Sequence record: MT161459.1
Length of the DNA stretch: 64,000 nucleotides
Strand: one strand, 5' to 3'
Positions 51,787 to 55,863 of this stretch are shown piece by piece. How positions within the stretch are numbered: the first letter of the stretch is position 1; every line of letters begins with the position of its first letter. Below the pieces are notes generated by a model, which searched no databases, was not told the DNA's origin, and saw only the letters and a program-made list of their open reading frames with translations. A program made the position numbers and the translations under genes.

Positions 51787-52761
51787 ATGAATTTTAATTT
51801 AGACACAGCTACCAACTACATCAAGAGTATTCCAGATAAGTTTACGCTGGAGAACGCTCAGGAGCTTGCCAATAACGCACTCGAGAGTTACGCAGATAGC
51901 ATTGTAGAGACTCCAGACTATGCCAAATTTATGAGGGTCGTTGAGAACCAAGACCTAGCACGAACCAACACTTTCGTTGTTCGATTTGAGGATTTTCGGA
52001 GCACTATCAATTCGGATGGTATTTTGGGAATGGCGGAAGGTATTATTCCAGATGGAGTAAAGGGGGCGTTTGGTGGGATTACCGGAGGGATCTCCAAAGC
52101 TATTGGAGGAAATAACTGGTCACGCATACAAGACATTGCGTACAACCAATCTCAGAAATTTCTGACTCCTAAGATCAAGAGTATCATGGGTGCATATGAC
52201 CCAAGTCTGGTTCGGTTGATCCCAGGCGCTGGGGAGTTTATCGATATGTTTACCGGAGCTGGATATGACGTCAACAAGGACTTAGCACTTATGGTGAAGT
52301 CCGTCAACTTGCCAGGTACAGCGTTCGAGACTCAAGTCAACAAAACTGACCGCAAGCCGTTTCACGAAGTTCGTGGACGTACATACGACAATATCAGGAT
52401 GACTCTGTATTGTACTCCTGGATATGCAGAGCGTATCTGGTTCCTGGCATGGATGAATAGTGTACAGAATCCCAAACGAGGAACTTATGGATTTTATAGC
52501 AAATATGCCAAGAACATCGACATTGTTACTCTGGACCGAAAGTCTATCAAAACATCTGTAGTACACTGCGATGGATGCTTCCCGATCAGAGTTGGAGAAA
52601 TCCAGTTGGATTTTGATCAAGGGAATCAAGTTGCAACATTCGAGGTAGAGTTTGCCATTAGCACAATGACACACTTGGAATCCAAAGGATCCCAGAACTT
52701 TGTTGCTGGCGCGGAGAGTATTTTCCATCGAGTCAAGGGCGCTATTGGCGCACTACGTTAA
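51787..52761 (+). CDS. gp54: Baseplate tail-tube initiator gp54
   Basis: DLARTNTFVVRF, MVKSVNLPG, WMNSVQNP, CFPI.VGEIQLDF...NQVATFEVEF (tube-like fold). Confidence 0.85.
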   Translation: MNFNLDTATNYIKSIPDKFTLENAQELANNALESYADSIVETPDYAKFMRVVENQDLARTNTFVVRFEDFRSTINSDGILGMAEGIIPDGVKGAFGGITGGISKAIGGNNWSRIQDIAYNQSQKFLTPKIKSIMGAYDPSLVRLIPGAGEFIDMFTGAGYDVNKDLALMVKSVNLPGTAFETQVNKTDRKPFHEVRGRTYDNIRMTLYCTPGYAERIWFLAWMNSVQNPKRGTYGFYSKYAKNIDIVTLDRKSIKTSVVHCDGCFPIRVGEIQLDFDQGNQVATFEVEFAISTMTHLESKGSQNFVAGAESIFHRVKGAIGALR

Positions 52762-52764
52762 TCA

Positions 52765-52790
52765 GAGGCCACCTTCGGGTGGTCTTTTTT
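52765..52790 (+). terminator. Intrinsic terminator after gp54
   Basis: GAGGCCACC-TTCG-GGTGGTCTT followed by a T run. Confidence 0.85.
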
Positions 52791-52873
52791 GTTGGTAACG
52801 CCATTGTACCGGAAGTTAGCGTTGAACCAAACTCCTTCCTATAACCGTGTATAAGCGATTGGTGACCAATCCT

Positions 52874-53061
52874 GTACGATCTATCAGGTTAGTATTCGAA
52901 ATCGATTTTAGCGGTGGTATAGAAGGTTTAAATGGATGGAGCGTAGCGACATCTCGACCGTAGGTCGATAGATGGTGAAGAGGGGGACTTATAGAGTCTC
53001 TTTAAAGGGTATAAGGAGATTCTATTTCTCCCCCTTCGGGGGAAGTGTCGCTACGCTCCAC
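52874..53061 (+). repeat. ~180-bp dispersed palindromic element, copy 2
   Basis: Inverted copy of 24535-24711 with the same 15-bp inverted repeats at 52937-52951 and 53046-53060. Confidence 0.9.
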
Positions 53062-53083
53062 GATCCATCTGATCCCTATCTTG

Positions 53084-53090
53084 CTAAATA
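53084..53090 (+). promoter_or_regulatory. Late promoter CTAAATA for gp26
   Basis: 24 nt upstream of the gp26 ATG. Confidence 0.75.
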
Positions 53091-53114
53091 AGTGAAATAA
53101 CCAAGGGGTGACAA

Positions 53115-53876
53115 ATGTCAAAATTTACGAAGGACATGCTGCTAGAAGCGGTCCAACAAACTAACGTCAAACTGTCCAACGGTAAAACGGTTCGTGTGCG
53201 AGCCATGCTTATCAAGGAGTTCAAGATCCTCATGCTTGCTGCTGAGTCAGATAGCGGTATGGAGGACTCCATTGTTCAAGTGCTACGCGGATGCGTTCTG
53301 GATGACAAACTTGATATCGGTACTCTACCAATCTTTGACGTCGAGACTCTGTATGTGACCATCTGGAAATTGTCCAAGGGTACTTCTATCGTTCCAGTTA
53401 AGTTCCGTTGCGTCAACGAGATCGAGAAGCCCATTCCTGACGATGAGGAAGGCAAGACTTACATGGGTCGGTGCGACACTGAGATCAAGGTCAACATCAA
53501 CTTGAATCAAGCTAAGCTGTCCAAGGTTCCGAAGCCGATGGTTAAGATCAGTGACAATCTGACCGTTGAGATGCGTTACCCCAACGTGTACGAGACTGAG
53601 TTCTTTAACGTCCAGAAAGATTCTGATTTGTTTGATCTGGTACTCCGTTGTATTAGCAAGGTCCACTTGAAAGGGGATGCGCTTGTCGTGGGTACGGATA
53701 TCCCATACGAAGAGCTAAGCGAGGTAATGGATTACATTGACGATAAAGGATTTGCAAAGATGGCTGCCTTTGTGAACGAGCTCCCGCAACTGTCTTTGAC
53801 TGCTGCGGTGAAGTGTCCACACTGCGGTCATTGTGAGCCAGTCGAGATGATCGGCCTTGCGGATTTTTTCGGCTAA
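53115..53876 (+). CDS. gp26: Baseplate hub assembly chaperone gp26
   Basis: V.VRAMLIKEFKILMLA, LPIFDVE.LY..IWKLSKG, MRYP, C-terminal CPHC...GLADFF. Confidence 0.9.
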   Translation: MSKFTKDMLLEAVQQTNVKLSNGKTVRVRAMLIKEFKILMLAAESDSGMEDSIVQVLRGCVLDDKLDIGTLPIFDVETLYVTIWKLSKGTSIVPVKFRCVNEIEKPIPDDEEGKTYMGRCDTEIKVNINLNQAKLSKVPKPMVKISDNLTVEMRYPNVYETEFFNVQKDSDLFDLVLRCISKVHLKGDALVVGTDIPYEELSEVMDYIDDKGFAKMAAFVNELPQLSLTAAVKCPHCGHCEPVEMIGLADFFG

Positions 53877-54046
53877 CCCTTCTAAATGATTCGGTGTACG
53901 ATTATTTCAACTTGAACTACAAGTTGCATCGGGAGGGCTGGAGTTTGACAGAGCTTGATACTATGACGCCTTTCGAGCGCACCATCTATCAACAGCTGTA
54001 CATCAACGATTTGAAAGAACGCAGACGCAATAAAGAGGAAACATGA
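53870..54046 (+). CDS. gp51: gp51-like C-terminal module in the -1 frame, probably reached by ribosomal frameshift from gp26
   Basis: Manual translation RLTLLNDSVYDYFNLNYKLHREGWSLTELDTMTPFERTIYQQLYINDLKERRRNKEET*. The Y..N..L.....SLTEL..M.P.ER pattern is gp51-like. No SD or ATG precedes the conserved part. The stop overlaps the gp29 ATG. Confidence 0.8.
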   Translation, partial: RLTLLNDSVYDYFNLNYKLHREGWSLTELDTMTPFERTIYQQLYINDLKERRRNKEET

Positions 54047-55863
54047 AAACAGAACAACAGATAGTGGAGGACTCCAGTCTAAAGCTGGCTGTCCAGCTTG
54101 ATGATGTTCGGAAGCAGACTGTTGATTTGGGAGTCGCGATAGATCTAAACACAGACGCCAACGTGGATGTCGCCAAGTCGAATGAAACGTTGGTTAAGGC
54201 AATAGATCAAGAAACGAGTTCCATCAAACGAGCTACCGAATACGTAGACACCGCAGCTTATTCCAAACGGAATGAGATAGATGTCAATGAGAAGTACCAA
54301 AAGGCGTTAGAACGCCGAACCGAGCTCGAGAATAAACTCAATGCTCAACAACCAATCATTCCATATTCAGAAACCGATCCGGAACGATTTAAGCCCAAAC
54401 AAAACACCAAACCGGAAGCTCCTGCTACCCCGAATGAGCCGGCATTTAATGGAACGCTTGAAGAATATCTCAAGGCCAATCTTGGATCGCTAAGTGATTT
54501 CAAGAAGCAGTTGCGCGAAGAACGGAAGGCCAAGGATAGAGAGAATGGAGAGGGGCTTGGAATAGCTAAGATTGCCAAGAATGCCATCCAGACGACGATG
54601 TCAGCAGGTTCCAATGCTATTTCATCTCTAGCGGATACCCTCCTACAAGGAATTCCTGGAGCGAGTATGGCTCGCAATGCGATATCTGGGACTACCAAGT
54701 TTGTCAAGGAGTCTGTCGTAGGTGGGTTCGAGTCAAGAAAGAAAACAAGGGAGCAATACGAGGCCAAGAAGTCTGATCTGACGTCCAAGTTCGAGAAGAT
54801 GCCACAATCTGCAGCACCTGCACCTGAATCTGCGCCTCCATCAACCGACGAGAAAATCCGACAGGATAGAGAGAACAAGAAGTCGGGAGAAGAGCGGACG
54901 GATCGCAAAGAGAATAGTCGCGAGCGCAAAGAAAATGAAAAGCGTCACAAATCCTTGATAGACGTGCTCAAGAATAACCAGATGTGGACATTGTTGGGTG
55001 GGATCTTCACTATGCTAGTTCCGATGTTTACTGGATTGCTGGGAACGACGAGAGGTATTCTCGGGGGCGTATTGAAACTAGGTCCAGCGCTGATTGCAAT
55101 GGGAGCTAAGCTCGTATCTGGAATGGGAGCAGCCATCGCTAACAGCCTGAAGCGAATAATGCCAGACTTCATGAAAGGCAAACTACCGGATGCCAAATCT
55201 CCAAGGATGGATCCGAAGTCAGGCAAGCCAACTGCTGAGGTTGATCCAAAGACGGGCAAACCCAGAACTACTACCACAACGACGACGACCAATACATCAT
55301 CATCTAAAGAGACGTCGAAGATTGAGCGCGTTAAAGATGGTATGAAGGGAGCTCAAACGGCGGGCGGTGAAGCGGCAGAAGCAGCTGGATCCAAAGCAGC
55401 GTCAGCTGGTGCCAAAACTGTAGGCAAGGCAGCTGGTAAGGGAGCGGCGGTCAAAGTAGCAGCTAAGGTATTGGGCAAGACCCTACTACGATTCATTCCG
55501 TTTGTTGGAACGGCTATGCTAGCTTACGACGCGTATACCATAGCGGATGAATTGTCCGGCGGAAAACTGACCGACTCGTTAATGTCCCTCAAAGACAAGG
55601 CCGTATCTGGAGCGACTGAAGCTCTTGGAATGTCGGCTGGCACAGAACCAGTTTCTGATGAGGTTGACGTTCACGAGAAAGGCGTCCAACAAGCTGAAAA
55701 GCAGGCAGAGGCTAAGAAGACGCAGGATGCCAGAGCTACAGCGGCTTATCAAGCAACGGCATTCAATACAACCAACAACAAGACTTATGCTGCATCCGGA
55801 TTTGCATTCGGTAGTGATAGCATGATGCAGTTGCAACCATATGGAGTTCAATCGGCGCGATGA
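54043..55863 (+). CDS. gp29: Baseplate hub / tape-measure protein gp29
   Basis: 606 aa, helical and low-complexity, with hydrophobic segments LLGGIFTMLVP and LLRFIPFVGTAML. Lies after the chaperones. Confidence 0.8.
   Translation: MKTEQQIVEDSSLKLAVQLDDVRKQTVDLGVAIDLNTDANVDVAKSNETLVKAIDQETSSIKRATEYVDTAAYSKRNEIDVNEKYQKALERRTELENKLNAQQPIIPYSETDPERFKPKQNTKPEAPATPNEPAFNGTLEEYLKANLGSLSDFKKQLREERKAKDRENGEGLGIAKIAKNAIQTTMSAGSNAISSLADTLLQGIPGASMARNAISGTTKFVKESVVGGFESRKKTREQYEAKKSDLTSKFEKMPQSAAPAPESAPPSTDEKIRQDRENKKSGEERTDRKENSRERKENEKRHKSLIDVLKNNQMWTLLGGIFTMLVPMFTGLLGTTRGILGGVLKLGPALIAMGAKLVSGMGAAIANSLKRIMPDFMKGKLPDAKSPRMDPKSGKPTAEVDPKTGKPRTTTTTTTTNTSSSKETSKIERVKDGMKGAQTAGGEAAEAAGSKAASAGAKTVGKAAGKGAAVKVAAKVLGKTLLRFIPFVGTAMLAYDAYTIADELSGGKLTDSLMSLKDKAVSGATEALGMSAGTEPVSDEVDVHEKGVQQAEKQAEAKKTQDARATAAYQATAFNTTNNKTYAASGFAFGSDSMMQLQPYGVQSAR

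What the first reader, a model, noticed from the sequence alone, without database searches (positions are those of the whole stretch)
53860..54046. Probable programmed -1 frameshift fusing gp26 to a start-less gp51 module just upstream of the tape-measure gene
Seen: gp26 ends ...GCG GAT TTT TTC GGC TAA, so 53864-53870 is the heptamer U-UUU-UUC (X-XXY-YYZ) in the correct phase. The -1 frame is closed by TGA at 53834-53836 and has no ATG/GTG/TTG before its conserved part. The first candidate start, GTG 53894, has no SD. That frame runs 58 codons to a TGA overlapping the gp29 ATG and encodes a gp51-like sequence. Slippage would give a 310-aa product ending ...GLADFF-RLTLLNDSVYDYFNLNY..., alongside the 253-aa gp26. 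A possible stimulator is CCCTTC (53877-82) pairing with GGAGGG near 53932, enclosing a CAACTTG/CAAGTTG hairpin. Established: lambda-type tail assembly chaperones G/GT use a -1 frameshift directly upstream of the tape measure gene, while T4 itself has separate gp26 and gp51. As I recall, T4 gp51 consists of a gp26-like body plus this C-terminal module. Inference: this lineage makes both hub chaperones from one gene by a G/GT-type mechanism.
Basis: partly seen in the sequence, partly recalled or inferred. Interest (0 to 1): 0.82.

Follow-up and report, generated by a model that had tools for sequence, protein, structure and literature searches.

The report
Frameshifted tail chaperone gene, T4-like phage
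This Aeromonas phage very probably makes a short and a long form of its tail-hub assembly chaperone from one gene, by ribosomes slipping back one base at a run of U's; the signal is real and strikingly conserved, but the same trick has already been described for T4-like phages.

Summary
The window is Aeromonas phage Ahp1_CNU-2021 (Straboviridae). These are the in-phase heptamer T TTT TTC at 53864-53870, a 0-frame stop one codon later, and a start-less 58-codon -1 ORF ending in a TGA that overlaps the next gene's ATG.

- The 0-frame protein is a gp26/gp51-family body (PF12322), and the -1 piece is the C-terminal module of T4 gp51.
- Both pieces align to in-frame gp51 proteins and abut exactly at the slip site.
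- All 88 relatives examined carry T TTT TTY in the same phase, 0-3 codons before the stop. They include Aeromonas, Vibrio, Cronobacter, Pseudomonas, Acidovorax and Xanthomonas phages, cyanophages and 80 metagenomic contigs.
- Two synonymous sites in the heptamer are invariant, and the -1 frame is open and coding from its first codon.
- The annotated GTG start is not conserved, and the genome has no separate long paralog.

The "tape measure" label rests on position and size only.

The class is already published (Vladimirov, Gautam & Davidson, Virology 2022, known to me only through citing papers). This is therefore an unannotated new member of a known kind.

The parts
53115..53876 (+). 0-frame ORF, 253 aa: gp26-type hub/tail assembly chaperone body (short form, 'TAC-N'). 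GenBank AHP1_2991 'baseplate assembly chaperone'.
   Evidence: PF12322 T4_baseplate E 2e-50. phrog_150 positions 10-232/282. AF2 model pLDDT 84.7, matching gp26/gp51 predicted structures in BFVD.
53864..53870 (+). Slippery heptamer T TTT TTC (X XXY YYZ) in 0-frame phase. P- and A-site tRNA-Phe can both re-pair in the -1 frame.
   Evidence: TTTTTTC or TTTTTTT is in the same phase in 88/88 relatives. In 43/43 clusters at 70% identity the preceding codon ends in T and the first Phe codon is TTT, against backgrounds of 0.36-0.78 and 0.71.
53874..53876 (+). 0-frame stop TAA, one codon after the heptamer.
   Evidence: Among the 86 loci, the stop lies 1 codon after the heptamer in 75, 0 in 7, 2 in 3 and 3 in 1.
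53870..54046 (+). -1-frame extension: 58 codons plus TGA, the gp51-type C-terminal module. It is decoded only after the slip. The long form would be 252 + 58 = 310 aa.
   Evidence: phrog_634 'baseplate hub assembly catalyst' E 2e-16 and phrog_150 positions 238-282. tblastn finds it from residue 1 in 342 phage records. It aligns to residues 199-253 of an in-frame gp51-type protein. The frame is open in 87/87 loci and differences peak at the third codon position. The first codon is Arg in 70/88.
53894..54046 (+). GenBank CDS AHP1_3001 (50-aa 'hypothetical protein' from GTG). Most likely a mis-call of the 3' part of the recoded gene.
   Evidence: The homologous codon is GTT, CCC, ATA or ATT in 7 of 10 Aeromonas-type/Cronobacter loci. 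Conserved module residues lie upstream of it.
54043..55863 (+). 606-aa ORF whose ATG overlaps the TGA of the -1 ORF (ATGA). Presumed tape measure (gp29 position and size), unproven.
   Evidence: phrog_11300 (function unknown). No similarity to T2 gp29, 590 aa, E 0.37. Relatives are in 35 Aeromonas and 1 Vibrio phage records, all 'hypothetical'.
53877..53937 (+). Present in the MFE fold, but not supported as a functional element.
   Evidence: z -1.64, with 14/200 shuffles folding as well. Not formable in Asswx_1 or avDM6. Broken without compensation in L100 and L101, and RNAalifold on 30 representatives gives no structure. No Rfam hit.
52764..52787 (+). Terminator-like hairpin plus T-run after the gp54-like gene. 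It marks the start of a separate transcription unit containing the chaperone gene and the 606-aa gene.
   Evidence: consensus scan only.

Best explanation
Gene 53115-54046 is a recoded tail/hub assembly chaperone gene.

Most ribosomes read the 0 frame and stop at TAA 53874, giving the 253-aa gp26-type short form. A minority slip back one base while tRNA-Phe occupies both the P site (UUU) and the A site (UUC) on U UUU UUC (53864-53870). They continue in the -1 frame for 58 codons and make a 310-aa long form. This long form is the counterpart of T4 gp51: a gp26-like body plus a C-terminal module.

The two forms would act together on hub and tail-tube initiation, probably on the protein encoded just downstream. 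This mirrors lambda G/GT and what is published for T4 gp26/gp51.

Shown here: the signal, its phase, its conservation, the coding status of the -1 frame, the seam homology, and the lack of an alternative start or paralog.

Inferred: that slippage is ribosomal, its efficiency, the stimulatory role of the nearby stop codon, and the chaperone function and its client.
For: - Sequence and phase.
- Family and module identity.
- Seam: the window protein aligns up to Phe252 with residue 198 of the in-frame gp51-type protein of L007, and the -1 piece aligns from residue 199.
- T4: gp51 has the module at about residues 206-248 (E 4e-13) and spans phrog_150 positions 13-280. T4 gp26 lacks it and spans 14-235.
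- Heptamer conservation: present in 88/88 loci, which fall into 17 clusters at 50% identity. They cover Straboviridae (Aeromonas, Vibrio and Cronobacter phages), Kyanoviridae, and Pseudomonas, Acidovorax and Xanthomonas phages.
- Synonymous sites: both are invariant in 43/43 clusters at 70% identity, although the preceding residue varies between S, D, N and A.
- Frames: the -1 frame is open for at least 54 codons in 87/87 loci, and both other frames are closed in 87/87. Differences by codon position are 3037/2605/4327.
- Overlap codon: the first -1 codon is Arg in 70/88, using all four CGN codons. The overlapping 0-frame codon encodes 11 different residues or a stop.
- Starts: 20/88 loci have no ATG, GTG or TTG before module codon 14. 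The window's GTG is not conserved.
- Paralogs: only one family member in the genome.
- Literature.
Against: - There is no expression data of any kind for this phage or its relatives.
- No stimulatory RNA structure was found.
- The window lacks the SD-like element that 59% of relatives have 9-10 nt upstream, so efficiency here could be low.
- 52/88 relatives have a start-capable codon within the first 8 codons of the -1 piece (48 of them an ATG), so some lineages could also reinitiate.
- A run of six or more T's is also compatible in principle with RNA polymerase slippage, which would give the same product.
- The fold link to canonical TACs is weak (HK97 TAC 2ob9: prob 0.54, E 0.55).
Confidence: 0.8

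Rival explanations
1. The -1 ORF is a separate small gene (a mini 'gp51' of about 50-58 aa). It is translated on its own from GTG 53894 or another non-canonical start, or by termination-reinitiation after the gp26 stop, and it acts in trans without being fused to the body.
For: GenBank annotates it this way, and many cyanophage records annotate a 45-50-aa 'gp51'. 52/88 relatives have a start-capable codon (48 of them an ATG) within the first 8 codons of the -1 piece. A subgroup has the stop overlapping an ATG.
Against: The window has no start before codon 9 and no SD. That GTG is GTT, CCC, ATA or ATT in 7 of 10 related loci. 20/88 loci have no start before codon 14, yet the module is conserved and codon-structured from codon 1. 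This reading does not explain the invariant heptamer at synonymous sites. It also does not explain the exact abutment on in-frame gp51 proteins.
Confidence: 0.08
2. The long form is made by transcriptional slippage. RNA polymerase stutters on the T run and produces some mRNAs with a changed run length, which place the module in frame. The protein product would be the same as with ribosomal slippage.
For: The conserved element is a homopolymer run of 6 T's in 77 loci and 7-8 T's in 11. No RNA stimulator was found. The title of Vladimirov et al. [quoted passage not shown]
Against: Six T's is short for efficient polymerase slippage (established knowledge: runs of about 9 are typical). An SD-like element 9-10 nt upstream is enriched in relatives (59% against a 5% background; GAG used 64% of the time against 28%). 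That is a ribosomal stimulator of the dnaX type. The 0-frame stop is held within 0-3 codons of the site. PRFect describes the 'other mechanism' as two separate genes, and PMC12846349 calls the polyT a -1 frameshift signal.
Confidence: 0.08
3. The arrangement is a non-functional remnant. Only the 253-aa form is made, and the module is decaying or dispensable.
For: There is no direct expression evidence, and the window lacks the upstream SD-like element.
Against: The module is intact and under coding constraint in all 87 testable loci across several phage families. The genome has no other copy of the module or the body. In T4, gp51 is essential for hub assembly (PMC3004832).
Confidence: 0.02

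Closest known systems
Poly-T -1 frameshift in the TAC-N genes of T4-like phages, and T4 gp26/gp51 as the T4 tail assembly chaperones (Vladimirov, Gautam & Davidson, Virology 2022;566:9-15; known here only through citing papers PMC10885494 and PMC12846349)
   Same: [quoted passage not shown] T4 gp51 equals body plus module, and T4 gp26 equals body alone.
   Different: Nothing essential. This phage's site is not annotated in its GenBank record. I could not read the paper, so I cannot say whether the Aeromonas lineage, the breadth of conservation (88/88) or the upstream SD-like element were reported.
Bacteriophage lambda gpG/gpGT, and the conserved tail-assembly-chaperone frameshift of long-tailed phages (Levin, Hendrix & Casjens 1993; Xu, Hendrix & Duda 2004)
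   Same: A -1 slip on an X XXY YYZ heptamer near the end of the upstream ORF. A minor long form shares the N-terminal body. The gene sits directly upstream of the presumed tape measure gene. No strong RNA stimulator is required.
   Different: No detectable sequence similarity, and only a weak fold hint to a canonical TAC (HK97 2ob9: prob 0.54, E 0.55). The body is about twice as long (253 aa). The heptamer is U UUU UUC rather than G GGA AAG. The extension is short (58 aa).
T4/T2 two-gene arrangement: gene 26 (208 aa, opposite strand) and gene 51 (249 aa)
   Same: The same two products in outline: the short body and the body plus C-terminal module, both PF12322/phrog_150.
   Different: In T4 the two are paralogous genes with no recoding, and they are separated from gene 29 by genes 27 and 28. 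Here there is one gene, one body sequence shared by both forms, and a fixed ratio set by slippage.
E. coli dnaX -1 frameshift (A AAA AAG with an upstream SD-like element and a downstream hairpin)
   Same: Bacterial tandem-slippage heptamer. In 59% of relatives an SD-like element lies 9-10 nt upstream, at a spacing like dnaX.
   Different: In dnaX the shifted frame ends almost at once, giving a shorter product. Here the shift extends the protein. No downstream hairpin is conserved here, and the window itself lacks the SD-like element.

Membership tests
PF12322 / phrog_150 (T4 gp26/gp51 baseplate hub assembly proteins) | Significant match of the body to the family profile | tested here: met
   PF12322 E 2e-50 (172 bits against a cut-off of 24.5) and phrog_150 E 2e-54. 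The AF2 model matches gp26/gp51 models in BFVD with TM up to 0.83.
PF12322 / phrog_150 (T4 gp26/gp51 baseplate hub assembly proteins) | Long form (gp51 type) carries the C-terminal module directly after the body | tested here: met
   The -1 piece matches phrog_150 positions 238-282 and phrog_634. The seam falls at residues 198/199 of an in-frame homologue. T4 gp51 has the module and T4 gp26 does not. The two frames were never joined.
Programmed -1 ribosomal frameshift of tail assembly chaperones (G/GT type) | [quoted passage not shown] | tested here: met
   T TTT TTC at 53864-53870. Present in 88/88 relatives with invariant synonymous sites.
Programmed -1 ribosomal frameshift of tail assembly chaperones (G/GT type) | -1 ORF without its own conserved start, coding from the slip site | tested here: met
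   open in 87/87 loci, third-position excess of differences, first codon Arg in 70/88, GTG not conserved, and 20/88 with no start before codon 14. Caveat: 52/88 relatives do have a start-capable codon (48 an ATG) within 8 codons.
Programmed -1 ribosomal frameshift of tail assembly chaperones (G/GT type) | Gene lies immediately upstream of the tape measure gene | tested here: inconclusive
   A 606-aa ORF follows with an ATGA overlap. Its size is like T2 gp29 (590 aa), but it shows no sequence similarity (E 0.37) and falls in a different PHROG.
Programmed -1 ribosomal frameshift of tail assembly chaperones (G/GT type) | Canonical TAC fold (as in HK97 gp10 / lambda gpG) | tested here: inconclusive
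   No PDB hit at E <= 0.001. HK97 TAC 2ob9 is the only hit with a non-trivial probability (0.54; E 0.55; 92 columns; TM 0.42 by target). No PDB sequence hit.
Programmed -1 ribosomal frameshift of tail assembly chaperones (G/GT type) | Two isoforms actually made in a fixed ratio; long form absent from virions; binding to the tape measure | not testable with these tools
   No expression, proteomic or interaction data were accessible.
Stimulated frameshift sites (dnaX type) | Downstream RNA structure and/or upstream SD-like element at the right spacing | tested here: not met
   For the window: the downstream fold has z -1.64 and is not conserved, and the upstream SD duplex is only -1.7 kcal/mol. 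In relatives the upstream SD-like element is enriched (59% against 5%).

The most novel reading that the evidence does not exclude
The published work may have covered only part of the picture. If so, three things could be new:
1. A single, essentially invariant signal (U UUU UUY with the 0-frame stop held 0-3 codons downstream) is shared across Kyanoviridae, large Aeromonas and Vibrio Straboviridae, and several unclassified proteobacterial phage lineages (88/88 here).
2. Most of them add a dnaX-like upstream SD stimulator that is written into the codon choice of a conserved Glu-Gly.
3. Hundreds of public genomes carry a truncated, mis-annotated 'gp51'.

A more radical reading that remains open is that the long form arises by RNA polymerase slippage rather than ribosomal slippage.
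Probability: 0.2. Interest if true: 0.45.

Novelty: new member of a known kind. Interest (0 to 1): 0.3.

Why it matters
For this genome, two GenBank CDSs (a 253-aa chaperone and a 50-aa 'hypothetical protein') should be read as one recoded gene giving a short and a long isoform.

More broadly, it is a clean example of two evolutionary solutions to the same need. T4 uses duplicated genes (26 and 51). Many other T4-like phages, including most marine cyanophages, use one gene and a -1 slip. This supports the view that gp26/gp51 are the T4-type counterparts of lambda G/GT.

The practical value is for annotation. Many records call a truncated 45-50-aa 'gp51' from an internal start. The conceptual point is already published, so the surprise for a specialist is small.

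Tried and rejected
- The search for related loci with the single protein found nothing. The alignment query worked.
- NCBIfam gave no family for any of the three proteins.
- The PDB sequence search with the family profile found nothing, and the PDB fold search found nothing significant.
- Rfam gave no match across 52700-54300.
They are not significant in the window (z -1.64) and are not kept in relatives at 68% identity or below. RNAalifold on 30 representatives gives no structure.
- The GTG 53894 start is rejected as the general route, because it is not conserved.
- A second gp26/gp51 paralog in the genome was looked for and not found.
- Homology of the 606-aa ORF to T2 gp29 was not detected.
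- Vladimirov et al. 2022 could not be read, so its content is taken from two citing papers only. Other citing papers added nothing.
- The trans-frame protein was never assembled. All searches used the 0-frame and -1-frame pieces separately.

Full report
**Identity and context.** The window matches Aeromonas phage Ahp1_CNU-2021 (MT161459.1, Straboviridae, 218 kb) at 100% identity. The local gene order on the + strand is as follows:
- a gp2-like DNA end protector;
- a gp54-like protein;
- a terminator-like hairpin at 52764-52787;
- a gap of about 350 nt;
- the 253-aa ORF 53115-53876 (GenBank 'baseplate assembly chaperone');
- a 50-aa 'hypothetical protein' annotated from GTG 53894;
- a 606-aa 'hypothetical protein' (54043-55863);
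- a gp3/gp19-like 187-aa protein;
- a dNMP kinase.

**Observation.**
- The ORF ends GCG GAT TTT TTC GGC TAA, so T TTT TTC at 53864-53870 is an X XXY YYZ heptamer in 0-frame phase.
- The -1 frame is closed upstream by TGA 53834-53836. It is open from there to TGA 54044-54046, which overlaps the ATG of the 606-aa ORF.
- From the slip site the -1 frame has 58 codons.
- In-phase heptamers at ORF ends are rare in this window (2 of 168 mechanical ORFs; 7 TTTTTTY on the + strand).

**What the two pieces are.** The frames were searched apart and never joined.
- The 0-frame protein is a PF12322 'T4_baseplate' protein (E 2e-50). It matches PHROG 150 at profile positions 10-232 of 282.
- The 58-aa -1 piece matches the gp51-type family phrog_634 (E 2e-16). 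It also matches positions 238-282 of the same phrog_150 profile.
- T4 gp51 (249 aa) spans phrog_150 positions 13-280, and T4 gp26 (207 aa as searched) spans 14-235.
- A module HMM finds the module at about residues 206-248 of T4 and T2 gp51, and not in T4 gp26.

**Seam test.** The comparison used the in-frame gp51-type protein of Shigella phage vB_SdyM_006 (L007, 257 aa).
- The window's 0-frame protein aligns up to its Phe252, opposite residue 198.
- The -1 piece aligns from its first residue, opposite residue 199.
- The two pieces abut exactly at the heptamer, as a -1 slip predicts.

**Comparative test.** tblastn with the -1 piece finds 342 phage records, nearly all from query residue 1. In every fetched record where the body and the module lie in different frames, the body CDS ends 7 nt after the module match begins. 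Using an alignment of six bodies, I pulled 80 IMG/VR loci at 26-33% identity. Counting the window, this gives 88 loci in 43 clusters at 70% identity and 17 clusters at 50% identity. They include:
- Aeromonas phages of three genera;
- Cronobacter phage LPCS28 and Pseudomonas phage Milchi;
- the cyanophages P-TIM40 and Syn33.

All 88 carry TTTTTTC (77) or TTTTTTT (11) in the same phase. Among the 86 loci, the 0-frame stop follows 1 codon later in 75, 0 in 7, 2 in 3 and 3 in 1. Three further lineages fetched afterwards show the same site with the module in the -1 frame: Vibrio phage ValKK3, Acidovorax phage ACP17 and Xanthomonas phage X1.

**Nucleotide-level constraint.**
- The residue before Phe-Phe varies between S, D, N and A, but its codon always ends in T. 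This holds in 43/43 clusters, against a background T fraction of 0.36-0.78.
- The first Phe codon is always TTT, against a background of 0.71.
- These two sites are synonymous in the 0 frame and lie upstream of any -1 decoding. Protein coding therefore cannot explain their invariance; a slippery site can.

**Coding status of the -1 frame.**
- It is open for at least 54 codons in 87/87 loci, while both other frames are closed in 87/87.
- Differences between cluster representatives over codons 3-18 fall 3037/2605/4327 by codon position.
- The first -1 codon is Arg in 70/88, using all four CGN codons. The overlapping 0-frame codon encodes 11 different residues or a stop.

**Starts.**
- 20/88 loci have no ATG, GTG or TTG before module codon 14.
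- The window's GTG 53894 is start-capable only in the window and its 92%-identical relatives. It is GTT, CCC, ATA or ATT in seven other loci.
- However, 52/88 loci have a start-capable codon (48 of them an ATG) in the first 8 codons, and some have the stop overlapping an ATG. Reinitiation as an extra route cannot be excluded in those lineages.

The Ahp1 genome has only one place matching the body and one matching the module. T4-type phages instead carry two paralogs. In T2 and T4, gene 26 is on the opposite strand and gene 51 is followed by 27, 28 and 29. In RB43, 51 and 26 are adjacent.

**Stimulators.**
It cannot form in Asswx_1 or avDM6, and it is broken without compensation at 68% identity. 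RNAalifold over 30 representatives predicts nothing, and Rfam has no hit.
- An SD-like element 9-10 nt upstream is enriched in relatives. 59% have a duplex of -6 kcal/mol or stronger, against 5% background. GAG is used 64% of the time against 28%, and GGG 25% against 6%. The window lacks this element (-1.7 kcal/mol).
- The stop codon held close to the site may contribute. That is inference.

**TAC membership.** The AF2 model of the body is confident (pLDDT 84.7, pTM 0.77) and matches many gp26/gp51 models. It has no significant PDB match. The HK97 tail assembly chaperone is the only hit with a non-trivial probability (0.54, E 0.55). The downstream 606-aa ORF shows no similarity to T2 gp29, and its relatives are all 'hypothetical'. 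The 'tape measure' label therefore rests on position and size alone.

**Literature.**
- PRFect (PMC10885494) cites Vladimirov, Gautam & Davidson 2022 for T4-like phages that carry one short and one long fused TAC gene instead of frameshifting.
- PMC12846349 cites the same paper for polyT -1 frameshift signals in TAC-N genes of T4-like phages.
- Two Acinetobacter phage records already name gp51 'tape measure protein assembly chaperone'.
- I could not read the 2022 paper itself.

**Verdict.** The mechanism is most likely a -1 ribosomal frameshift (0.8). The class is already known, so this is an unannotated new member.

Noticed in passing
L094 (Stenotrophomonas phage IME-SM1, KR560069.1), about 1880-1990: In this record the T run at the homologous site has a different length. 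The module lies in the +1 frame relative to the body, and the annotated 280-aa CDS runs on in the 0 frame without the module. This could be a homopolymer sequencing artefact or a real variant.
   Followed up: partly
relatives L008-L087, 9-10 nt upstream of the heptamer; window 53846-53859: An SD-like GAGGG/GGAGG is written into a conserved Glu-Gly. It is present in 59% of loci against a 5% background, with codon choice skewed towards it, at a spacing like dnaX. The window itself lacks it.
   Followed up: partly
window 54043-55863: The 606-aa ORF in the gp29 (tape measure) position has no detectable similarity to T2 gp29 and falls in a different PHROG (11300 against 1283). It has relatives only in 35 Aeromonas and 1 Vibrio phage records, all 'hypothetical'.
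   Followed up: partly
L006 1558-1695 (Syn33 gp51), L005 1558-1704, L092 1534-1677, window 53894-54046: Public records routinely annotate a truncated 45-50-aa 'gp51' or hypothetical protein from an internal ATG or GTG. This cuts off the conserved first 9-19 codons of the module, a systematic annotation problem across cyanophage and other T4-like genomes.
   Followed up: partly
L009, L019, L031, L034, L072-L074: A subgroup has a run of eight T's running straight into the stop codon. In L009 and L031 an ATG overlaps the stop in the -1 frame. These lineages could combine slippage with termination-reinitiation.
   Followed up: no
window 53115-53876 (residues C99, C120, C234, C237): Four cysteines are invariant in the 11 Aeromonas-type bodies, including a C-x-x-C near the C-terminus with a weak UPF0547 zinc-ribbon hit. 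The C-x-x-C pair (C234, C237) is absent from the cyanophage homologues. This suggests a lineage-specific metal site.
   Followed up: no
window 52762-53114: A gap of about 350 nt lies between the gp54-like gene and the chaperone gene. It contains a terminator-like hairpin (52764-52787) and a second GC-rich hairpin near 53028-53047. The chaperone and the 606-aa gene are probably a separate late transcription unit.
   Followed up: no
L001 11229-15601 (record 212445-216839): A cluster of at least ten tRNA genes (Leu x2, Ser, Asn, Ile, Thr x2, His, Met and others) lies a few kb downstream of the tail genes, according to the GenBank annotation.
   Followed up: no
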